From Sphyrna mokarran (lineage: Eukaryota), in the NCBI GenBank assembly GCA_024679065.1, contig JAGIQG010000040.1:3596001-3660000 (forward strand): a stretch of DNA of 64,000 nucleotides. The letters are read 5' to 3'. Shown piece by piece: positions 2,455-57,600 of this stretch. How positions within the stretch are numbered: the stretch's first letter is position 1; every line of letters begins with the position of its first letter. Both the position numbers and the translations under genes were made by a program. The notes under the pieces were generated by a model that searched no databases, had not been told where the DNA came from, and was given only the letters and a program-made list of their open reading frames with translations.

Positions 2455-3072
2455 ATGCTGCTACCCAGTTTTCATAATGCTCCTTTGTATTTGGAAAAAA
2501 AGGTCAAAAACCCCTCCTCTCCTTCTGTTTTAGCTTTATGTACAATTTAAAGAATGACAATAGTAAATATATCTCCACACATCTGACTCAAAGAAATTAC
2601 TGGCCAATAAATGATGGAAATCAAGTGGTTTCGTCATCTTGTACTTTGGCTGGTGTTTGGTATGTAAAACTATAACACCTTGTGTGATTGCAGTAGCGAC
2701 ATTTTGAAACATTTTCATGGAATTTTTCACTCAGTGTTGCATTAAATCTTCCCTTATGTTTTATTTCAAGGCTGACTCAAGCAGATTTTGGGTCTCCTCT
2801 ACAGTCTGAATTGCATCTTACTGAAGGAGATAGAGTGAAAATGGACGGCAGTACACAACAAACAACAATAACACCGATTTCTACTGGTACAGGTAGCACA
2901 ACGACAGAAGAGATGCAGATTTTGCCAAGGAAAAGTTCGAAGCTGGTCAGGCTAATGCAGAAAATAAGTTTCTTTCAGCGATTGCTTGAACAGAAATCCA
3001 AGACACTGCTGTCTATTCCTGCGTGTTGAAAGACACAAAGATCTAAAACTCGTCTATCGCTGTACAAAAACC
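2455..3072 (+). pseudogene. TCR V pseudogene, same family as the 990-1293 V
   Basis: Frameshifted leader (ATG CTG CTA CCC.. VFIMLLCIW, ~2455-2511). V exon ~2771-3033 reads FYWYR*HNDRRDADFAKEKF...IA*TEIQDTAVYSCVL, with stops and an FR2 deletion. RSS: CACAAAG (3034-3040), 23 nt, ACAAAAACC (3064-3072). Confidence 0.82.
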
Positions 3073-3420
3073 TCACCAAACGTAACTAGCACAAGTGGTA
3101 TCTCCAGTTCAAATTCTATCCGTGGCCATGTGCTAACTGTTACATTTCTCAATTCTATAAACTAAAATGGTCTTGTGCAGTTATTATTAAGACTAATATA
3201 AACTGAGATGTAGTCTAATTAAGTTGTTGCTCATACAGGGACGAAATTAATAAAAGCTGAGGCAGCTTCTAGTGCACTCATTGGGAGTGAAGAACTTGAC
3301 AGAGTTTAATTGGGTTGCTCTGTGTGCGTGTTTGAGTAGTTGACAGCCTCATTGAGACTGGTTTTATCCGAGATTCTAGACAACTTCAGTAGGCAGGAAC
3401 GGCAGGTTCAATCGGAAGAC

Positions 3421-5149
3421 AGTTTTTGTACAGAGTTGATATTGTTTTCAATCACTGTAAGTCCCAGAGAGAGCACAGTAATATCACTGCAACATTAATT
3501 GGCTGAGACTTTCCATCACAGCATCCCAAGACCGTCTCCTTCGCTGACGGCTGCATGTCCCAATATACAAGACACTTCTCTTCTGTAGTGCGATAGGTGC
3601 ATTTCGTTATCACGGCTTCCCCTTCTCTCCTGCTCTCTGAAGACTGGGACAGAATAACTGAATCTTCATCATTCTGATCGCCTACCACTGAAACAGGTCC
3701 ACAGCAGATGCCATCTACCTAGCCCTGCACTCAACCTTGGAACACCGAGATAACAAGGGCACACTCTTATTTATTGACTACAGTCAGATTTCAACACCAT
3801 TAGCCTGACGAAATTCATCTCCAAACTCCGCGGCCTGAGCCTCGGCTCCAACCTCTGCGACTGGATCCTGCACTTCCGAACTCACAAACCACAATCAGTA
3901 AGGATAGACAACAACATCTCCTTCGTGATTATCCTCAGTATCGGTGCCCCACAAGGCTATGTTCTCAGCCCCTTACTGTACTCCTTATATACCTGTGATA
4001 TGTCAGAACATCCTCCTTCAACTTAATTTTCCAGTTTGCTGACGACACCACTGCAGTGGGTCGGATCTTAAACAATGACGAGGCAGAGTATAGGAATGAA
4101 TTAGAGAGTCTGATGAACTGGTGTGATGACGATAATCTCTCCCTCAGTGTTAGCAAAATGAACGAGATTATTAATCCATTTCAGGAAGCGTTGTGGAGGA
4201 CGTGCCCCGTCTACATTAACGGGAACTAAATAGAAATGGTCTAAAACTTCCAGTTTTTAGGCTTTGAGATCACCTACAACCTTCCTTAGTACCCCCACAG
4301 CGACATTATAGTTAAGAAAGAGCCAGCATCGTTCTCTTTTCCATCTTCTTGCATCAGGAAGAAGATATAAAGGTCTGTGGTCACCAACCAACCGATTCAA
4401 AAACATCTTCTACCCTGCTGCCATCAGATTTTTTAATGGACCTACCTTGCACTAAGTTCTGCACCGTAGATTTGACTGTAACACTACACTCTGTACTGTC
4501 TCAGGTAGTTACTATGAAATCTGCTTGAGTTTCAAGCAACAAACAAAACAAAACTTGCTGGCTAAACTCCGCAGGTCTGGCAGCATCTGGGAAGACAGAA
4601 ATAGACTTATACATTGTCATATGGATCCTTATGAATCTATTCAGATTCTGTACATAGGATATATGGACCCGAAACATTAACCCTTTTCCTCTCTTGGTTG
4701 ACATACTTCAAGCAAAGACTGATTATCAATGAAGAAACATTTAACTTTTTGTATTTGTACACTTTATATAAACAGAGGCATAAAGCCTATATCTTTCTCT
4801 TAAAATTAAAGTTGAACCAACACCCCCAATGTTTTGGAAACACAATGCAATTCTTCTTACCCTTCAATAACCCAAGTTTTAACTACTGCACGTTGCTGTA
4901 AACTTCACTGCAATCAAAGTGAATGGACATTCAAAACGCGCATCGCTCCGTCTATCCTTCGATACGACTGTCTCTCTGTCCATCAATCCATCATCTATCC
5001 TCTCTTATCCCCTATAATGACTGCATAATACCCTTCAGTTTCTAAATACAACCGTCACTCAATTGTTGACACAAATCTTCATTCTAATGCAGACTTAACG
5101 ATTCACCAAACTTCAGGAGAAGAATGAAAACGGTAATCACAAAATTCAT
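3421..5149 (-). pseudogene. TCR V pseudogene (inverted) with intact leader and a LINE in its intron
   Basis: Leader exon 5149-5107 (MNFVITVFILLLKF+G|gtgaat, phase 1) splices in frame to the V exon starting at 3687 (DSVILSQSSESRREGEAVITKCTY..VYW). Internal deletion and a frameshift before YYCAL. RSS: TACAGTG (3459-3453), 23 nt, ACAAAAACT (3429-3421). Confidence 0.82.
3697..4500 (+). mobile_element. 5'-truncated non-LTR retrotransposon RT fragment (Rex1/Babar-like)
   Basis: Degenerate RT motifs: DAIYLALHSTLEH..LFIDYS..FNTI, GAPQGYVLSPLLYSLYT, FADDT. Confidence 0.75.
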
Positions 5150-6123: not shown

Positions 6124-6605
6124 ATGAAAATCCTCCTTGTCTTCACTGTGTGTGTCTATTTACCCCGTGAGTACTGATCATATTAAACTACATTGTATGG
6201 GTTGAAAGTAAAGCTGCCCCACTTCAGCCCCTTTATAAACACTGTCTGAGTTTTTAGCCCCGTTCTGTGGTTGAGCTCTGATGGTCTATTAAATGCCCTG
6301 TGTTTAATTTCCAGGATCGTTCAGTCAGTCAGTGACACAGAGTCCGCCAACCGTGACCAGGAAGGAGTGCCAGTCTCTCACCATCACCTGTGTTTTACAT
6401 GGAGTTTATGATTTGGGAACTGGTCATTTTTTCAAACTGGCCCAGACCGGAACAGAGCAGGAACAGATCTCCAATGGAGGGAGATTCGTTGTGTCGGTCA
6501 ATGAAGGAGAGAAGAAATTTTCACTGGAAATTCAGGATCTGAGAATTGAAGACACCGCCACCTACTACTGTAAAGCTCGGTACTGGTACTATACAAGTGG
6601 GACAC
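6124..6605 (+). CDS. NAR-TCR V (IgNAR-like V domain of TCR delta): leader exon 6124-6166 + V exon 6315-6605
   Basis: Leader MKILLVFTVCVYLP+C|gtgagt; acceptor ttccag. Reads QSVTQSPPTVTRKECQSLTITCVL...ISNGGRFVVSVNEGEKKFSLEIQDLRIEDTATYYCKA. It has the VNAR-like architecture (short FR2, no CDR2), the extra FR1 Cys typical of NAR-TCR V, and the FR2 Trp replaced by Phe. Confidence 0.92.
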
Positions 6606-6633
6606 CACAATGGAATGGAGAAGGACAAATACC
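6606..6633 (+). promoter_or_regulatory. 12-bp-spacer RSS on NAR-TCR V
   Basis: CACAATG (6606-6612), GAATGGAGAAGG (12 nt), ACAAATACC (6625-6633). Confidence 0.85.
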
Positions 6634-6959
6634 CAAATATAAAAAAAAACGCAATAATTCTCAGCAATTCCCAATTTCGGTTACTTAACTGTCGGCATGA
6701 TGCCATTCCCACTTCAGTCTGGTTTAATTTCAGTGTAATTTCCTTCGATCAATTATCATTCTTTAACGTTTTTCTCCCTTAATAATAACCTTCCATCTCT
6801 GCTCCTGTTCCATTATCACAGGAGCTCAGAGAATCACAAAGTACAGCGTGAGTCAATTTTTTAAAGCAATCAATGTTCATTATTGGCCCCAATCTTGTGA
6901 GTAATGTAGAAACGCTGAGTGCCCGGTAATGCTGGCTGCTACGAGCTTGAGGCTTCAGT

Positions 6960-6998
6960 CATTTTTGTATTGGGCTGATTGAGAGCGGTGTCACTGTG
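6960..6998 (+). promoter_or_regulatory. 23-bp-spacer RSS of NAR-TCR J
   Basis: CATTTTTGT (6960-6968), 23 nt, CACTGTG (6992-6998). Confidence 0.9.
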
Positions 6999-7051
6999 GG
7001 GAAAATGGAGATTTGCAGATGGGCCTGGGACAGAAGTGATTGTCACAGCCG
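6999..7051 (+). CDS. NAR-TCR J segment
   Basis: GKWRFADGPGTEVIVTA+G|gtaagt: a G-x-G-T J motif with a phase-1 donor that joins in frame to the supporting V exon at 10970. Confidence 0.9.
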
Positions 7052-9670: not shown

Positions 9671-10969
9671 ATGTACAGGAACAAGTTTCATCCAGCTGGG
9701 CCGAATGGCCTGTTCATGATAAGTGGAAAGCGTAAAACGTAAAGCGTAGAGACAATTCTGTTTGGAAAGGACAAAGAACATTCAGCCAATGGATTAAAGA
9801 GATTAATATTCTCGCACATTCTGAAGGCACTGCTTTTACTGCGTGTGTAGCAGTAAAACCACTGCGGAAATTGAACTGGCTGAACAACTGAGAGAAATTA
9901 GGGCAAGTTTTCATAACGGTTAGAAACCATGACGGTTAGAAACCACTAAGAACAGACAAAAAAAAACTCAGATGTAGAAATAATATGAAATCAACTTACA
10001 AATATTTCTAATAGAAGTAAAACAGAAAAATGGGTGAAAACAGACAAGCAGCACAATGGCAGGCAGGAATTAGCTTGCAGTGTTGAACTACACTGTCAGT
10101 CTTTGACCCGCAGATAAATATTGTCAGCTCAAATTAACAGGTATGGACGAACATCTCTGCCCTGTGTTGAACATCGATATGCGCAAGGGGATTAGAAAGA
10201 TTAATTCTCCTTCGGGCAATCAAACCTAGAGAGCAATTGATTCAGTGAGTAGAAGAGTAATCTTTTATGATTTATTCTGCATTGATGTGTTACCAATATA
10301 GTTGTTGGCAGATATTTATTAAAAATGGAATCATACTTCGCATAATATATAATTCGGCCAATAATGACAAATATTTCAACGTGTTACCAATGTACCCATT
10401 CGCCCTTCTTTGGTCCCTTTGCACTGGAGTCTTGTCCTGTGCCAGAAGTTTTTGTTTGATTCTCCATTGTCGTTTGAAAGTTAATGTAGAATCTGCTGCC
10501 TGCACCGCTCCTTCTGCAGTGCACTCTAGGTGCGTGCATTTGAACGAGGAAATAAATCTGAAGGTCTGCTCTGCTTGTTAATTTCCAACGATCAATGCAA
10601 TTTAAAACAAATTCACAGAACCCCAGAACGACAGAAGGAGACCATTCGGCCAATCGAATCTCTATCGTCCACATCCCCACAACCCCAGACATTTACACCG
10701 CTAATTCCGCTAAAAGACTGCGGTCAATTTAGCATGGCGAATCAACATAACCTGCACATCTTTAGATGTGGGACAAAACCGGAGCGCCCGAGGAAACCCA
10801 CACGGACACGAGGCCGGATTAGAACCCGGTTCCCTGGCACTGTGAGACAGAATTGCCAAATGCCAGCCCCAAATTCAATGAAACAAATTGTCGCAGCAGA
10901 CAGGCCCAATTGACAAGCTTTATGGGGCTAAACAGTGGCTAAAAAATTCATTATGTTTCTATCTTGCAG

Positions 10970-11275
10970 ATTCCAGCTCATCTGTGTCACCAAGTTCACT
11001 TGCCCAAACCTCTGCTGCCGGTGACACGGTTACTCTAATCTGTGAATATTCAGGAATCTGTCAGTACACAGTACACTGGTATCGTCAGTCCCCAGGACAG
11101 GCACTGAAATACCTGCTTCAGGCACACACATCAGGAGAGGAGAGTAACGAAAACGCTGGCGGGGGCAGAATTTCTGTTTATATGCATTCTTCAGTCAAAA
11201 TCAGCCGGTTAGAGATCACCAAACTGCAACTGAGCGACTCCGCTGTTTATTATTGTGCACTGACTGGACGCAGAG
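10970..11275 (+). CDS. Leaderless NAR-TCR-supporting TCR delta V segment
   Basis: Acceptor cttgcag at 10963-10969. Reads DSSSSVSPSSLAQTSAAGDTVTLICEYSGICQYTVHWYRQ...DSAVYYCALTGRR, with an extra CDR1 Cys (predicted partner of the NAR-TCR FR1 Cys). Lies downstream of, and in frame with, the NAR-TCR J donor. Confidence 0.92.
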
Positions 11276-11375
11276 CACAGTGACACAGAACACGGAGAGA
11301 GCTGTACAGAAACCTGAACACGGTGAGGATTGCAGACACAGTGATAAAGAGCACTGAGAGAACTGCACAAAAAAT
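11276..11375 (+). promoter_or_regulatory. Two tandem 23-RSSs
   Basis: CACAGTG (11276-11282)-23-ACAGAAACC (11306-11314), and CACAGTG (11337-11343)-23-ACAAAAAAT (11367-11375). Confidence 0.88.
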
Positions 11376-11777
11376 TAAATATGCAAGAGTTACTGATTCT
11401 TGCACTCCTCAACATGATCAGGCATTTCCACATGTCTCTCTCTGGCCCACTTCCTCTCCTCCCCGCCCCCTTCACTCCCCATCCCCAGCCATCTTCACTG
11501 CTTTCCATTTCTCTCTTAGTGCGGACAAATTAATTACCCAAACTCTCTTGCAATGCCACATTTCCTTGCTCAGTGACTCACTGCGTCCCTGACTTAACCC
11601 ATGTGATTTCAAATCAAATTCCGTCCAGCATGAAACTTCCAGGGTCACAGGTACCAGCTTTGTCAAACAGTCCTCTGGATTCGAAATGATAGCTCTTTTC
11701 TTTCCTTATAGATGATGCCAGACTTGCTGAGATTTTCCCATCATTTTCTCTTTCGTCTTTAATTCTCACTATTTTCA

Positions 11778-11932
11778 GGTTTTTGTCCAGATCTCTCCGT
11801 ATTCTTTATCACTGTGTCTGTGACCATTATCATGTTCGGGTTTTTGTACAGCTCTCTCCTGCAAGATGGTATCTGCAATCCTCGCCATATGTAGGCTTTT
11901 GTATAGCCCGCTGCGCGTTCTGTGTCACTGTG
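11778..11932 (-). promoter_or_regulatory. Three tandem RSS units (two complete 23-RSSs, one nonamer-only)
   Basis: Proximal: CACAGTG (11932-11926)-23-ACAAAAGCC (11902-11894). Middle: nonamer ACAAAAACC (11847-11839) with the heptamer lost. Distal: CACAGTG (11816-11810)-23-ACAAAAACC (11786-11778), a perfect consensus. Confidence 0.88.
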
Positions 11933-12219
11933 CTGTGCACCGAAGTCAATGCACTGTAATACATACCAATTGTAGTTTGGAGAACTTTAACTGACTAATT
12001 TTCTCGGCAGAATCGACAGAAGCAGATATTTTCTCTCCGGCAATGTTTTCTTTTTTTGTCCTCTCTTGAAGTGTGTGTCTAAAGCAGATATTTAGGAGCC
12101 TGCCCTCGGTATTGACTGTACTGCCCTGCTGACAGATTCCTGAATATTCACAGCTCTGTGTAACTGCCTGACAGCAGACGTTTGGAGCGCCAGATTCTGA
12201 GACGTGAGGGAGCTGGAAG
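11933..12219 (-). pseudogene. Supporting TCR delta V pseudogene (inverted paralog of 10970-11275)
   Basis: Reverse strand reads ASSSLTSQNLALQTSA..CEYSGICQ..GQAPKYLL*THTS..ENIAGEKISASVDSAEKISQLKFSKLQL..YYSALT. Contains a stop, frameshifts and loss of the second Cys. Confidence 0.88.
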
Positions 12220-12714
12220 CTGGAAGGGAAGGAATGAACATTACTTGTTTGTTTTCCTCAGTGAAATTGACCATTGAGTGAACATCTCTTTTTTTTCTCG
12301 GACTTCAAATCTGATCGAACAAGATTCACTATGATTGAAATATGAAATATGATGAAATAGGGAAAGAAGTGGTATTATCAATTTGCCTGGTGAATGTTTC
12401 TCATCTAGAATACAAGGTCAGAATTGGTTGTGGAAACCGATTCTTTGTAACTTCCAAACCTATTATGGAATGTGTTACAACAGGGAAAATTGCAGGGCTA
12501 TGGATAAAGTGCATGTGCAGTGGGAACTTCTGGCTTGTTCAGTTGAAGGGACAGCAGCTACCAGAGGAGCCGAATATCGGCCTTCCCACATGTCACGTTA
12601 AATCAATAATTGTTCAGACTCTGTCAACCAACGCCAACAGCCATCCTGATCTCCCACGACACCGACCATATTCCATCAGGTGACACACAAGCTTTCCCCT
12701 CAACTGAAAAAAAA

Positions 12715-16290: not shown

Positions 16291-16329
16291 GGTTTTTGTA
16301 CGGATTGACTGTGCCTCTGTAACAGTGTG
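16291..16329 (-). promoter_or_regulatory. 23-RSS
   Basis: CACACTG (16329-16323), 23 nt, ACAAAAACC (16299-16291). Confidence 0.9.
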
Positions 16330-29895: not shown

Positions 29896-32800
29896 TCAGG
29901 ATGTAATGAGTTGACGAATTGCAGTAAGAGGATATTTCAGCAGATCTTTTAGCTGTTGTCTGAATTGAGTCTGTGTCACAGCATAAATGGCAGTGTTTGT
30001 GCAGCAACTTGTGAGTTGCAGCATGAATCCCAATTCCATAACAAAATAATCTATCCATATTGACCGGAAACCCAAATCATACATCCGAAACCATAGAGAA
30101 TAAACCATTAATGTCGACCATAATAAGATGAAATTGGCAGAAATAACAAACAGTAAAATGATGGATTTCCTTCGACTCTCCATCTCTGGGTCTTTGGGAC
30201 TTTCCCCATTGCTTTGAATCCGGAGTCTCCTGCGGGCTCTGCTGCTCACTAAAATGTGCCTGATGGTAAGAGCATTGAGCAGCAGAATCAGAATGAATGG
30301 GACACATGGGGTTAGAATGTGGTGGAGGAACTCGATTGTTACCCAGATTGGAGATGCCACAAAATCATACATGGCCAAACAAAACCAGGGGACATTCCCC
30401 AGCCAATATGCTTCTAATAACATAAAATACCAGAAAATGTTCTTTAAACAGCTCAGCACTGTCACTGTTCCCAGAACCACAGCTGCCGATTTCTCACTGC
30501 AATATTTACTTTTTAGTTTAGGGCAGCAAATGGCCACAAATCGATCAAAGGTGAAAGTGACGGTGAACCAGACAGAAAAGTCAGTGACTGCATAAAGCAG
30601 GACGGCATGGATGTTGCACAAGGGGACTGCTAGCAGGAAACTAAACTGTTCTGGATAAACAATGGGAATGTGTCTCAATATTAGGTCGATGATAATGACC
30701 AGCAGATCCCCCACTGACATGGCCACCAGGTAATAAGTGACACATTTGGACAGACCACAGTTTCTGCTCGTCAGTGTCACAATTGTGATTATATTCACTG
30801 TAAAGAAGAAAATAAAAATTGAAATTAGACATGATTCGTGGAAGAAATTATCATTTAGACCGAGGATAGGTTAAAATTTAAAAAAATGTACACACACAGA
30901 AAAGATTTATTTTTAATCCAGCACATCTTTTGCAGTGTGAGAGGAAAATTGGGCATGTGAAGGAAACGCACTCAGAAACGGGGACAAGGTCCACACTCCA
31001 CACAGACACCGACACAACCTGCAACTGAACTGAGGTCCCTGATGCTGAGAGTCAGCAGTGTTAACCACTATGCCACTTTGCTGCTCCATGGTAGGGACAC
31101 AGCGTACATATTCCAGAGAATCCATAACATTGACCCTCACTCAGCTACAGGTAAATAGTCCCTATAACTTGTGAGGAATTTGGAGCGTAAGAAGGCTGAA
31201 AGAGTAAACCCTGACAGGAAATTCGGAGTGGAGTCTGTAGGTGGTAATCTGTCATGTCTTAGACACCCTATAGGCAAACACTGCAACAGGGCTGATACCA
31301 AACTGCGCTGGTTTCACCTTTTTCTCTGGAGAATATTAACAGTTGGCAAAAGGAGAACCCGATGCCTCAAAATTCAGACTATTATACTTACACAGAACTG
31401 TACCCTGGAGAGGAGACCACCGATTTATGGCCACACTACGCACAACGCAGGAAGAAATAGTAATTTCACACTCGACTGGCACAGAACTCAGGTACCAGGA
31501 TTTGCTTTCAAAAGTCGGAAAAAGCTTTAGGGTTCAGTGAATAGCTACCGTCGATAGTGCCCAATAAAGTTGCTGCTCTCCCATCTTCTTGCCTACTGGA
31601 CCATTGAAACTCAACGCGTCCTCTCTCAGTGGGAAAGTTGCTAATCTATGCATCAGGTAAGAAAAATCCAAATCAAGGCCGCTACAAAATAAAAGTCAAG
31701 CAGGCTGCTTTAATGACTGTCGTCCAGTTACTCCAGTATTCAATATTATGAAATGCATCATAAGTTTCGTCATGGTATAAATCAATTCCAGCAGCCCAGA
31801 TTGCCTGGATCCATTATAGTTCATCTACTCCACAAGTCCATAAATGCCATTTCCCTAGCCATGCAGTCAACCATGTAACTCGTGTTTATCATAGAGTCAT
31901 AGACGTTTACATCTTGGGAACAGGCCCGTTTGCCCAATTTTTCTATGCCATCCATTTTTTAAAACTCTAAACTAATCCTTCTTGCCCACATTTGGCCCAA
32001 ATCCCTCTATACCATCGCACCCATTTAACTATCTAACCACTTTTTAAAAGATAACATTGTACCCGCCTCTGCTACGACCTCTGGCAGATTGTTCCTGACA
32101 CTCACCAACATCTGTGTGAAGAAAAAAATGACTCTCTGGATTCTTTTGAATCTCTCCCCTCTCACCTCAAAACTATGCCCTCTAGTTTTAGACGTCCCTA
32201 CCTTTTGGAAAAGATATTGACTATCTGGCTTGTCTATGTCTCTCATTATTTTATAGACACCGATAAGGTCACCCCTCAACCTCTATGTTCCAGAGAGGAA
32301 AGTCCCTGTCAATTTAGCCTCTCCTTATAACTCAATCCATCAAATCCCCGTAGCATCTTTGCAAATCTTTTCTAGGCTCTTTCTAGTTTAATAATATTCT
32401 TTCTATAATAGAGTGACTAAAATTGCACACAGTATTCCAAGTGTGGTCTTATCAGCGTCTTGTACAACTTCAACAAGACGTCTCAACTTCTGCATTCAAT
32501 GTTCTGACCAATGAAACCAAGCATGCCGAACCCTTTCTTCACCACACTGTCAACTCCACTTTCAAGGAGCTTTGAATATGTACCCCTGGATCACCTTTTT
32601 TAATAAGTCTCTCCAATGCCCTCCCATTAACTCAGTAAGACCTGCCTTGGTTCAATCTACCAAAATGCATTATGTCGCACTTGTCTAAATTAAACTCCAT
32701 CTGCCATTCGTCATCCCATTGGACCAATTGACCAAAATCCTGCTGGAATTGCAGATAATCTTCCCTACTGCCAACCACGACACCAATCTTGTGACATCTG

Positions 32801-54622: not shown

Positions 54623-57600
54623 TCAGGATGTAATGAGTTGACGAATTGCAGTAAGAGGATATTTCAGCAGATCTTTTAGCTGTTGTCTGAATTGAGTCTG
54701 TGTCACAGCATAAATGGCAGTGTTTGTGCAGCAACTTGTGAGTTGCAGCATGAATCCCAATTCCATAACAAAATAATCTATCCATATTGACCGGAAACCC
54801 AAATCATACATCCGAAACCATAGAGAATAAACCATTAATGTCGACCATAATAAGATGAAATTGGCAGAAATAACAAACAGTAAAATGATGGATTTCCTTC
54901 GACTCTCCATCTCTGGGTCTTTGGGACTTTCCCCATTGCTTTGAATCCGGAGTCTCCTGCGGGCTCTGCTGCTCACTAAAATGTGCCTGATGGTAAGAGC
55001 ATTGAGCAGCAGAATCAGAATGAATGGGACACATGGGGTTAGAATGTGGTGGAGGAACTCGATTGTTACCCAGATTGGAGATGCCACAAAATCATACATG
55101 GCCAAACAAAACCAGGGGACATTCCCCAGCCAATATGCTTCTAATAACATAAAATACCAGAAAATGTTCTTTAAACAGCTCAGCACTGTCACTGTTCCCA
55201 GAACCACAGCTGCCGATTTCTCACTACAATATTTACTTTTTAGTTTAGGGCAGCAAATGGCCACAAATCGATCAAAGGTGAAGGTGACGGTGAACCAGAC
55301 AGAAAAGTCAGTGACTGCATAAAGCAGGACGGCATGGATGTTACACAAGGGGACTGCTAGCAGGAAACTAAACTGTTCTGGATAAACAATGGGAATGTGT
55401 CTCAATATCAGGTCGATGATAATGACCAGCAGATCCCCCACTGACATGGCCACCAGGTAATAAGTAACACATTTGGACAGACCACAGTTTCTGCTCGTCA
55501 GTGTCACAATTGTGATTATATTCACTGTAAGGAAGAAAATAAAAATTGAAAATAGACATGGTTTGCGACAGAAATGACCATTTAGACTGAGGATGGGTTA
55601 AAATTTTAAAAAATGTACACACATATAAATGATTTATTTTTAATCCAGCACGATTTTTGCAGTGTGAGAGGAAAATTGGGCATTTGGAGGAAACGCACGC
55701 AGCAAGGGGGACAAGGTCCAAACTCCACACAGACACCGATCCAAGCCTGGAACTGAACTGAGGTCCCTGATGCTGACAGTCAGCTGAGTTAACCACTATG
55801 CCACTTTGCTGCTCCATGGTAGGGACACAACGTACATATTCCAGAGAATCCATAACATTGACCCTCATTCAGCTACAGATAAATAGTCCCTATACCTTGT
55901 GAGGAATTTGGAGCATAAGAAGACTGAAAGAGTAAACCCTGACAGGAAATTCGGAGTGGAGTCTGTAGGTGGTAATCTGTCATATCTTAGACACCCTATA
56001 GGCAAACGCTGCAACAGGGCTGATACCAAACTGTGCTGGTTTCACCTTTTTCTCTGGAGAATATTAACAGTTGGCAGAAGGAGAATTTGATGCCTCAAAA
56101 TTCAGATTCTTATACTTACACAGAATTGTACCCTGGAGAGGAGACCACCGATTTGTGGCCACACTTTGCACAACACAGGAAGAAATAGTAATCTCACACT
56201 CGACTGGAACAGAACTCAGGTGCCACGATTTGCTTTCAAAAGTAGAAAAAAAGTTTCAGGGTTCAGTGAATAGCTACTGTCGATAGTGCCCAGTGAGGTT
56301 GCTGCTCTCCCACTTTGGCCTACTGGACCACTGAAGCTCAAAAAGTCTTCTCTCAGTGGGAAAGTTGCTAATCTATGCATCAGGTATGAAAAATCCAAAC
56401 CAAGGCCGCTACAAAATAAAAGTCAAGCAGACTGCCTTAATGACTATCGTCCGATTCCTCTAATATTCAATATTATGAAACGCTTCATTAGTTTCATCAT
56501 GGTATGAATCAATTTCAGTAGCCCAGATTGACTGGATCCATTATAGTTCATCTGCTCCACAAGTCCACAAATACTATTTCCATAGCCATACAGTCAACCA
56601 CGTAACTCGCGTTTATTATAGAGTCATAGAGTCATAGACGTTTACAGCTTGGGAACACGTCCGTCTGCCCAATTTGGCCATGCCACCCATTTTTTAAAAC
56701 TCTAAACTAATCCCTCTTGCCCGCATTTGGCCCAAATGCCTCTATACCATCGCATCCATTTAACTATCTCACCACTTTTTAAAAGATAACATTGTACACG
56801 CCTCTGCTACTACCTCTGGCAGATTGTTCCTGACACTCACCAACATCAATGTGAAGGAAAAAATAGCTGTCTGGATACGTCTGAATCTCTCCCCTCTCAC
56901 CTTAAAACTATGCTCTCTAGTTTTAACCTTCCCTACCCTTTGGAAAAGATATTGACTATCAACATTGTCTATGCCCCTCATTATTTTATAGACACCCATA
57001 AGGTCACCCCTCAACCTCCATGTTCCAGAGAAGAAAGTCCCAGTCTATTCAGCCTCTCCTTATAACTCAATCCATCAAATCCCAGTAGCATCTTTGCAAA
57101 TCTTTTCTCAGCTCTTTCCAGTTTAATAATATTCTTTCTATAATACGGTGACTAAAATTGCACACAGTATTCCGAGTGTCGCCTTATCAGTGTCTTGTAC
57201 AACTTCAACAAGACGTCTCAACTTCTGTATTCAATGTTCTGACCAATGAAACCAAGCATGCCAAATCCTTTCTTCACCACAGTGTCCATCTGTGACTACA
57301 CTTTCAAGGAGCTTTGAATAGGTACCCCTGATCACCTTTTTTAATAATCGAGAACATATAACACTACAGCACAGAACAGGCCCTTCGGCCTTCGATGTTG
57401 TGCCGACCAAAATAAAAAGCAATGCCCCTCCAAACTAAACCATTCCCTTCTCTTCAATATACTTATCAATTAACCTCTTAAACGCCACCAAACTTGGCGC
57501 ATCTACAACTGCTGCAGGCAGGGCATTCCACTCCCGAACCACCATTTGGGTAAAGAACCTACCTCTGATATCCGTCCTATAACTATCACCCCTTAATTTT

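What the first reader, a model, noticed from the sequence alone, without database searches (positions are those of the whole stretch)
11276..11932. Tandem arrays of extra 23-RSSs behind both NAR-TCR-supporting V-delta genes
Seen: the functional supporting V has a second complete 23-RSS 61 bp behind the first. The inverted paralog has three units (periods ~55 and 61 bp), and its distal one is a perfect CACAGTG-23-ACAAAAACC. Inter-RSS linkers are related (aggattgcaga). Heptamers, nonamers and exact 23-bp spacing are kept while the spacers and linkers have drifted. None of the conventional V genes in the window show this. Seen: the V frame stops inside the proximal heptamer (GCA CAG TGA), so a join at a distal RSS would be non-productive yet would leave the proximal RSS intact. 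Inference: the array could allow serial rearrangement or editing of the supporting V, concentrate RAG at the cassette to coordinate its two rearrangements, or act as a delta-Rec-like deleting element. I do not know of a description of this, but cannot check the literature.
Basis: partly seen in the sequence, partly recalled or inferred. Interest (0 to 1): 0.85.

Follow-up and report, generated by a model that had tools for sequence, protein, structure and literature searches.

The report
Repeated recombination signals behind shark V gene
Behind a shark T-cell-receptor V gene of the doubly rearranging NAR-TCR type, the DNA signal that tells the RAG enzyme where to cut is repeated head to tail; the repeats are real and occur in other copies, but nothing yet shows that the extra signals are used.

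Summary
The intact supporting V-delta exon (10970-11275) is followed by two complete 23-RSSs, 61 bp apart. The inverted copy (about 11933-12220, minus strand) is a frameshifted pseudogene with no NAR V partner in the window. It has two complete 23-RSSs, the distal one a perfect consensus. Its middle unit is only a remnant: heptamer 3 of 7, spacer 6 nt short.

All five units belong to one 61-bp repeat, a 39-bp RSS plus a 22-bp linker. None of the four conventional V segments in the window has it. The array is older than the V inversion-duplication (74% V identity).

Contigs of four public runs under four organism labels show more such units, including arrays with extra units. The scan also noted the same kind of array at two other places in this genome (unchecked).

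Selection on the extra RSSs is not shown. Heptamers are invariant in 4 of 5 units, but nonamers are no better kept than spacers, and other copies carry damaged units. No RNA or thymus data were available, so use by RAG is untested.

My best reading (0.55) is an RSS-bearing minisatellite inherited with the supporting-V family and probably RAG-competent by sequence. A selected function is not excluded (about 0.2). I found no description of it in print.

The parts
10970..11275 (+). Supporting V-delta exon of the NAR-TCR cassette. It has an open frame, no leader, a splice acceptor directly in front, and an extra Cys in CDR1 (CEYSGIC).
   Evidence: ORF 10888-11283 reads through the acceptor into the V and stops at 11281-11283; the NAR J donor at 7051/7052 has phase 1, which fits; 62% identity to P0001 and 48% to a Callorhinchus Ig-like protein.
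11276..11314 (+). Unit A1, the proximal 23-RSS: heptamer CACAGTG, 23-nt spacer, nonamer ACAGAAACC.
   Evidence: In most other copies in three other runs the G at 11309 reads A, the consensus nonamer base (table 3).
11315..11336 (+). 22-bp linker between A1 and A2.
   Evidence: Related to the linkers of the inverted copy: 17/22 identical to LB1.
11337..11375 (+). Unit A2, the distal complete 23-RSS: CACAGTG, 23-nt spacer, ACAAAAAAT.
   Evidence: (D2: 81% over 37 nt, spacing 61).
11933..12220 (-). Inverted paralog of the supporting V. It is a pseudogene and has no NAR V partner in the window.
   Evidence: stops; 208 of 282 aligned V positions identical, 24 gap positions. Cys codon is AGT; only one NAR V in the window.
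11894..11932 (-). Unit B1, the proximal 23-RSS of the pseudogene: CACAGTG, 23-nt spacer, ACAAAAGCC.
   Evidence: Against A1: heptamer 7/7, spacer 18/23, nonamer 7/9.
11872..11893 (-). 22-bp linker after B1.
11817..11871 (-). Unit B2, a 55-bp remnant: heptamer lost (TACCATC), spacer 6 nt short, nonamer ACAAAAACC intact, followed by its 22-bp linker.
   Evidence: nhmmer E = 1.1e-10.
11778..11816 (-). Unit B3, the distal 23-RSS with a perfect consensus. Its spacer shares the ATAAAGA start with A2 (18/23).
   Evidence: 0 mismatches.
11756..11777 (-). 22-bp tail after B3, homologous to the linkers. The repeat unit is therefore RSS plus 22 bp.
   Evidence: TB3 against LA1 scores 10, reached by 0 of 5000 shuffles.
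6313..7051 (+). Context, the upstream half of the cassette: NAR-TCR V (about 6313-6605) with a 12-RSS (6606-6633), then a 23-RSS (6960-6998, -) and the NAR J (6999-7051) with a splice donor.

Best explanation
This is a minisatellite whose repeat unit is a whole 23-RSS plus 22 bp of flank (period 61 bp, with shortened 55-bp variants).

Origin and history (inferred): it arose by tandem duplication behind an ancestral NAR-TCR supporting V-delta. It has since travelled with that V family as cassettes were duplicated. Unit number then changed by in-register unequal exchange or slippage.

That process explains three things without selection:
- the exact 23-bp spacing is kept;
- only supporting V genes carry the array (common descent);
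- sequence from the proximal RSS, which is under selection, can spread into distal units.

Consequence for recombination (inferred): distal units with an intact heptamer and an A-rich nonamer should be cut by RAG. A join at such a unit would keep the proximal RSS plus linker behind the V, read into a TGA, and be non-productive. A later cut at the retained proximal RSS could still rescue the allele.

What is shown: the units, their homology, their age relative to the V duplication, variation in unit number, and decay of some units.

What is inferred: RAG competence, occasional use, and the near-neutral status of the array.
For: - Five homologous units are found, and only behind the two supporting-V copies.
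- The tail after the last unit of the inverted copy is homologous to the linkers, so the unit is RSS plus 22 bp.
- A1 resembles B1 and A2 resembles B3 (spacers 18/23 each), while the V exons are only 208/282 identical. The array therefore predates the inversion-duplication.
- Unit number differs (2 against 3), and unit relationships are mosaic. A1 shares its first 16 nt and its linker end with B1, but its distal spacer and nonamer with B2.
- Some units have decayed. B2 has lost its heptamer and 6 nt. A paralog in X1 has heptamer CACAGCG and a 16-nt linker, and a unit in X8 has a nonamer 2 nt short (table 5c).
- Contigs of X6 and X8 'go back' 61, 54 and 85 nt, which means arrays with more or different units (table 5).
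- At linker position 11321 the variant letter is carried by 8, 9, 14 and 30 contigs (X1, X2, X6, X8). At the listed V-end positions (11253-11273) the counts are 4-6, 2, 3-5 and 3-6 (table 3).
- Nonamers are no better kept than spacers (p = 0.5-0.7).
- Two earlier scan notes report the same arrays at other supporting V genes of this genome (unchecked).
Against: - Heptamers are perfect in 4 of 5 units, although identity elsewhere is about 50-80%. Among the four intact units 7 of 7 heptamer columns are invariant against 20 of 54 other columns (p = 0.002). A crude star-tree neutral estimate gives P = 0.006 for at least 4 of 5 perfect, and 0.039 for at least 2 of 3 distal units perfect. Both figures depend on dropping B2 or on a consensus biased towards A1.
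- The distal unit of a long-dead pseudogene (B3) is a perfect consensus RSS. That is unexpected if everything there drifts freely.
- Arrays persist in both old paralogs and in related species.
- Concerted evolution is an inference, not a demonstrated process here.
Confidence: 0.55

Rival explanations
1. The array is kept by selection as a multi-shot or RAG-recruiting device. Several adjacent 23-RSSs would raise RAG occupancy at the leaderless supporting V. That V must rearrange on the same chromosome as its NAR V. Alternatively, a first sterile join at a distal unit could be followed by a second join at the retained proximal RSS (serial rearrangement or editing).
For: - Perfect heptamers in 4 of 5 units, and exact 23-bp spacing in those four.
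- A perfect consensus RSS at the distal end of the pseudogene's array.
- Arrays behind supporting V copies only: 0 of 4 conventional V segments in the window have one.
- Arrays recur in other copies and in related organisms.
- A distal join would keep the proximal RSS intact.
Against: - Every join at a distal unit is non-productive (TGA; 61 is not a multiple of 3), so extra RSSs compete with the productive one.
- Nonamers are not better kept than spacers.
- One of three distal units is dead, and damaged units occur in other copies.
- Restriction to supporting V genes is explained by descent alone.
- No data on use are available.
Confidence: 0.2
2. The array is a decoy or attenuator. Distal RSSs would divert RAG into sterile joins and so lower the rate at which the supporting V is productively rearranged. 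They could also act as a deleting element that removes downstream D-J DNA, as delta-Rec does.
For: Only the geometry supports this. Distal units lie on the side away from the V, and their use gives a sterile join that deletes the intervening DNA.
Against: - The position of D-J-C relative to this window is unknown.
- The units are attached to a V, not isolated as delta-Rec is.
- No conservation signal goes beyond that discussed above.
- The same array sits behind a dead V.
Confidence: 0.07
3. Assembly artefact or chance resemblance.
For: Tandem Repeats Finder reports no array here at a minimum score of 30. X1 may be the sample that was assembled, so its perfect contigs are not independent support.
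Against: - 10 hits against 0.83 expected.
- Unit homology at E = 1e-10 to 1e-16 (the model was built from these same units, so they match by construction).
- Zero-difference contigs bridge V to A1, A1 to A2 and beyond, and the whole B array (records 3, 6 and 8).
- Similar units appear in three other runs.
Confidence: 0.02

Closest known systems
Alternative (cryptic) RSSs next to canonical RSSs, with germline retention in coding joints (mouse TRBJ1-7 at -40 and TRBJ1-2 at -31; Mika et al. 2019, PMC6857471; I read the abstract and section 10, part 1)
   Same: A second heptamer/nonamer lies a few tens of bp beyond the canonical RSS on the non-coding side. Its use leaves the canonical RSS inside the coding joint.
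   Different: The mouse sites are weak, unrelated sequences used in under 0.1% of joins (TRBJ1-2). Here the extra sites are homologous tandem copies of the canonical RSS, near or at consensus, and shared by a V family. Their use is untested here.
Minisatellites (tandem repeats of 10-100 bp units whose number changes by unequal exchange or slippage); general knowledge, recalled
   Same: Head-to-tail units of 55-61 bp; unit number differs between paralogs and in contigs of other runs; mosaic unit relationships; decayed units.
   Different: The unit is a complete recombination signal that sits exactly where a functional RSS is needed, so each copy is a potential RAG target.
delta-Rec / kappa-deleting-element type isolated RSSs (recalled)
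   Same: An RSS whose use gives a sterile, deleting rearrangement.
   Different: Those are single RSSs not attached to a functional V, with dedicated partners. Here the RSSs follow a V and are repeated, and no partner is known.
NAR-TCR supporting V-delta genes (Criscitiello et al. 2006, not held, recalled; features as restated in Venkatesh et al. 2007, PMC1845163, passages read)
   Same: No leader, a conserved Cys in CDR1, and a position 3' of a rearranging NAR-TCR V.
   Different: The passages I could read say nothing about RSS number. RSS does not occur in the main text of PMC1845163.

Membership tests
Canonical 23-RSS | Heptamer CACAGTG, with CAC next to the coding flank | tested here: met
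   7/7 in A1, A2, B1 and B3. Not met in B2 (TACCATC).
Canonical 23-RSS | Spacer of 23 +/- 1 bp | tested here: met
   Exactly 23 in A1, A2, B1 and B3. B2 has 17.
Canonical 23-RSS | A-rich nonamer close to ACAAAAACC | tested here: met
   8/9, 7/9, 8/9, 9/9 and 9/9 for A1, A2, B1, B2 and B3.
Canonical 23-RSS | Cut by RAG and joined to a 12-RSS partner | not testable with these tools
   No RNA or raw-read runs were available; all 24 listed runs are contigs.
NAR-TCR supporting V-delta | No leader exon; V exon begins at a splice acceptor | tested here: met
   A ...ttgcag acceptor precedes 10970, in phase 1, which matches the NAR J donor at 7051/7052. The feature is as stated in PMC1845163.
NAR-TCR supporting V-delta | Conserved extra Cys in CDR1 | tested here: met
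   CEYSGICQ in the + copy, in P0001 and at DNA level in the - copy; P0002 reads CQYSGFC at the same place.
NAR-TCR supporting V-delta | Lies 3' of a rearranging NAR-TCR V/J on the same strand | tested here: met
   Met for the + copy (NAR V 6332-6604, J 6999-7051). Not met for the - copy: no NAR V on its side.
Minisatellite | Head-to-tail homologous units of 10-100 bp | tested here: met
   Tandem Repeats Finder missed it because there are few copies and they are about 75% alike.
Minisatellite | Unit number varies between copies or individuals | tested here: met
   2 against 3 units in the window. Joints that go back 61, 54 and 85 nt, and extra units in tables 5 and 5c.
delta-Rec-like deleting element | Isolated RSS with a dedicated downstream partner; sterile deletion of the delta locus | tested here: not met
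   The RSSs are not isolated but directly follow a V. Partner and use could not be tested.
Functional alternative RSS (as in Mika et al. 2019) | Coding joints that retain the canonical RSS, and matching signal joints | not testable with these tools
   No thymus DNA or RNA reads were available.

The most novel reading that the evidence does not exclude
The RSS arrays are a selected feature of the doubly rearranging NAR-TCR. In this reading, a row of RAG-competent 23-RSSs behind the leaderless supporting V makes it a preferred RAG target, or one that can be tried again. That would help its rearrangement keep pace with that of the NAR V on the same chromosome. Joins at distal units would then be regular intermediates that are resolved at the retained proximal RSS.
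Probability: 0.2. Interest if true: 0.8.

Novelty: new variant of a known kind. Interest (0 to 1): 0.52.

Why it matters
RSSs are normally single. How RAG chooses between adjacent signals has been studied on artificial substrates and on weak cryptic sites.

A V family that naturally carries rows of near-consensus RSSs would be a natural competition substrate. It sits in the oldest vertebrate lineage with V(D)J recombination, at the one receptor chain that needs two rearrangements.

If the extra signals are used, that would show serial rearrangement at a V end. If they are not, they show how far a functional signal can be copied and tolerated. They also warn annotators, because the first RSS found by a scan need not be the one next to the V.

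Tried and rejected
Attempts to fetch the 3' flanks of other supporting V genes all failed.
- A protein-pattern scan of metagenome contigs matched 62 stretches, none of them a relative.
- A DNA pattern for two tandem 23-RSSs in metagenome contigs gave 4 loci. Three are an unrelated 57-bp satellite from a marine metagenome, and one is a chance hit on a contig with 54% G+C.
- The reverse strand of the array is open in all three frames, so I used one reverse ORF as a protein query. The word search found no candidate, and exhaustive phmmer over 1.84 billion representatives found 0 hits.

Ideas tested and dropped.
- The 22-bp linker as a copy of the V coding end: the best p was 0.016, but conventional V ends used as controls give similar values (0.0115), so this is inconclusive.
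- The linker as a D-like element: rejected, because it has no 12-RSS on its 5' side.
- The second tail-to-tail V pair at about 2770-3780 as a palindrome like the A/B pair: no inverted repeat was found.
- A RAG hairpin as the origin of the A/B palindrome: no heptamer lies at the ends of the arms, so I did not pursue it.

Literature. Eight searches were run. None found a paper describing repeated RSSs behind shark supporting V genes. The phrases 'tandem RSS(s)', 'duplicated RSS', 'RSS duplication' and 'additional 23-RSS' occur in no immunology paper of the held library. Criscitiello 2006 (PMC1458790) and Ott 2021 (PMC7909615) are not held, so I cannot exclude that a figure there shows it. Supplements were closed and not consulted; table S1 of PMC12227049 lists locus coordinates and might bear on annotation. 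The library lacks most subscription journals.

The read-laying table of other letters showed only 40 of 254 places, so a per-position conservation profile across copies could not be made.

Full report
**What is there**

The window carries a NAR-TCR cassette on the + strand.
- A NAR-type V lies at about 6313-6605 and ends in a 12-RSS (6606-6633).
- A 23-RSS (6960-6998, - strand) precedes a J (6999-7051), which ends at a gtaagt donor.
- A leaderless V exon starts at a splice acceptor at 10970, in the phase left by the J. It has the CDR1 cysteine (CEYSGIC) that marks supporting V-delta genes. These features are as restated in PMC1845163, of which I read passages.
- Its open frame ends in TGA at 11281-11283, across the end of the first heptamer.

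**The observation**

A consensus 23-RSS search allowing 3 mismatches gives 10 hits in the window against 0.83 expected. None of 100 shuffles reaches 10. Four hits are in the finding:
- A1, 11276-11314 (nonamer ACAGAAACC);
- A2, 11337-11375 (nonamer ACAAAAAAT), 61 bp further on;
- B1, 11932-11894 on the minus strand (nonamer ACAAAAGCC);
- B3, 11816-11778 on the minus strand, a perfect consensus.

Between B1 and B3 lies a 55-bp unit, B2. Its nonamer is perfect, but its heptamer is TACCATC and its spacer is 6 nt short. The inverted copy therefore has two complete RSSs and a remnant, not three.

The five units align as one 61-bp repeat of RSS plus a 22-bp linker. The 22 bp after B3 are homologous to the linkers; none of 5000 shuffles reaches the observed score against the A1 linker.

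A profile of the units finds only these five in 64 kb. The next hit has E = 0.85, though the units match their own model by construction. Tandem Repeats Finder did not report the array.

Four conventional V-like segments each have one RSS: 1294-1331, 3034-3072, 3421-3459 and 16291-16329.

**The inverted copy**

It is a pseudogene.
- Frame 1 has two stops.
- It differs from the + copy by 24 gap positions, with 208 of 282 aligned V positions identical.
- Its Cys codon reads AGT.
- tblastn finds only one NAR V in the window, on the other side.
- An intact relative of this copy exists elsewhere. P0001, from a jgi/ena contig, is 78% identical over its first 37 residues.

**Age and dynamics**

A1 pairs with B1: heptamer 7/7, spacer 18/23, nonamer 7/9, linker 17/22. 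A2 pairs with B3: spacer 18/23, with a shared ATAAAGA start. The array therefore existed before the inversion-duplication that left the V exons 74% identical.

Unit number has changed since then, and unit relationships are mosaic. This fits in-register unequal exchange, which keeps the 23-bp spacing automatically.

**Other copies**

No RNA run was found, and all 24 listed runs are contigs. I laid four runs on 10700-12500 at 80% likeness.
- X1 holds 0.94 of the sampled words and may be the assembled sample. It tiles the stretch with zero-difference contigs, so the arrays are not an assembly slip.
- Contigs of X6 go back 61 and 54 nt, and one contig of X8 goes back 85 nt. These are arrays with extra or different units.
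- The letters between joints show further units. A paralog in X1 has heptamer CACAGCG, a 23-nt spacer and a 16-nt linker. A unit in X8 has a nonamer 2 nt short, followed by a normal linker and heptamer.
- At linker place 11321 the variant letter is carried by 8, 9, 14 and 30 contigs (X1, X2, X6, X8). The listed V-end places carry 2 to 6. This suggests several units per V in the other organisms, but contig counts are not copy numbers.
- Single-copy flank in X8 differs at 30 of 305 places, so these are fairly close relatives and not deep conservation.
- Only 40 of 254 variant places were shown, so I could not build a per-position profile.

Two earlier notes of this scan report the same kind of array behind other supporting V genes of this genome (s1-887384 and s1-887583). 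Two more report other tandem RSS-like arrays. All four are unchecked.

**Is there selection on the extra signals?**

The evidence is mixed.
- Among the four intact units, pairwise identity is 42/42 for heptamers, 42/54 for nonamers, 96/138 for spacers and 69/132 for linkers.
- In those four, 7 of 7 heptamer columns are invariant against 20 of 54 others (p = 0.002). Dropping B2 to obtain this figure is circular, however. With all five units p = 0.34.
- For the distal pair A2/B3, p = 0.029, which leans on a doubtful tail alignment.
- Nonamer against spacer is never significant (p = 0.18-0.7).
- A crude neutral estimate gives P = 0.039 for at least 2 of 3 distal heptamers perfect.
- The perfect RSS behind a dead V is the oddest point. 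Spread of sequence from the selected proximal RSS by unequal exchange could explain it, but that is inference.

**Mechanism**

By sequence, A2 and B3 should be RAG substrates (inference). A cut at 11336/11337 would leave the V, A1 and the linker as the coding end. The join would carry an in-frame TGA and 61 extra nt, and A1 would remain available for a second cut.

This resembles the alternative RSSs near mouse TRBJ genes, whose use retains the canonical RSS (PMC6857471; abstract and section 10 part 1 read). There the sites are weak and unrelated in sequence to the canonical RSS.

**Novelty**

I found no description in eight searches of the held library. The original NAR-TCR paper and a 2021 review are not held, and supplements were closed.

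**Verdict**

The feature is real and apparently undescribed. It is best read as an RSS-bearing minisatellite inherited with the supporting-V family (0.55). A selected role is not excluded (about 0.2) and could be tested directly with thymus DNA.

Noticed in passing
window 6313-7051: The NAR-TCR V ends in a 12-RSS after a long tail (…YYCKARYWYYTSGT) and faces a J with a 23-RSS. No free D lies between them, so this looks like a germline V-D join. The scan already noted it as s1-886819.
   Followed up: partly
window 11309: The proximal RSS of the intact supporting V has G at nonamer position 4. Most other copies in three other runs read A, the consensus base: 13 of 13 contigs' worth of depth in X2 and the majority in X6 and X8.
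   Followed up: no
window 11367-11397 against 11740-11777: The 3' end of the A2 nonamer seems to result from a deletion of about 13 nt relative to B3 plus its tail (inverted repeat I7). This would explain why the A2 tail aligns poorly with the linkers.
   Followed up: partly
window 10963-11397 and 11740-12226: The two supporting-V copies form a 1.3-kb imperfect palindrome, tail to tail, around about 340 bp of unique sequence. That central part contains a piece of a high-copy interspersed repeat (11676-11738; summed contig depth 1e4-1e5).
   Followed up: partly
window 2770-3072 (+) and 3421-3780 (-): A second tail-to-tail pair of V-like segments has RSSs facing each other about 350 bp apart. 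Both have off-consensus heptamers (CACAAAG, TACAGTG), the minus one has a broken frame, and they are not an inverted duplicate of each other.
   Followed up: partly
window 29896-30798 (-) and 54623-55525 (-): Two identical 300-aa GPCR-like ORFs lie in what looks like a segmental duplication. The scan already noted this as s1-886941.
   Followed up: no
window 10700-10880: A very high-copy interspersed repeat just upstream of the supporting V exon; summed contig depth is up to 1e6 in all four runs.
   Followed up: no
L001 1-2519, L002 643-2041, L003 2687-3010: ENA marine-metagenome contigs (33-36% G+C) carry a 57-bp satellite in both orientations. Its unit holds CACAGTG, 23 nt and a nonamer-like word, with a few units matching the RSS consensus exactly. 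It is unrelated in sequence to the shark unit, and its source organism is unknown.
   Followed up: partly
P0001 (jgi/ena contig of 1197 bp): An intact open reading frame of the type of the inverted pseudogene, including its upstream intron-derived residues. That lineage of supporting V is therefore alive in some genome.
   Followed up: no
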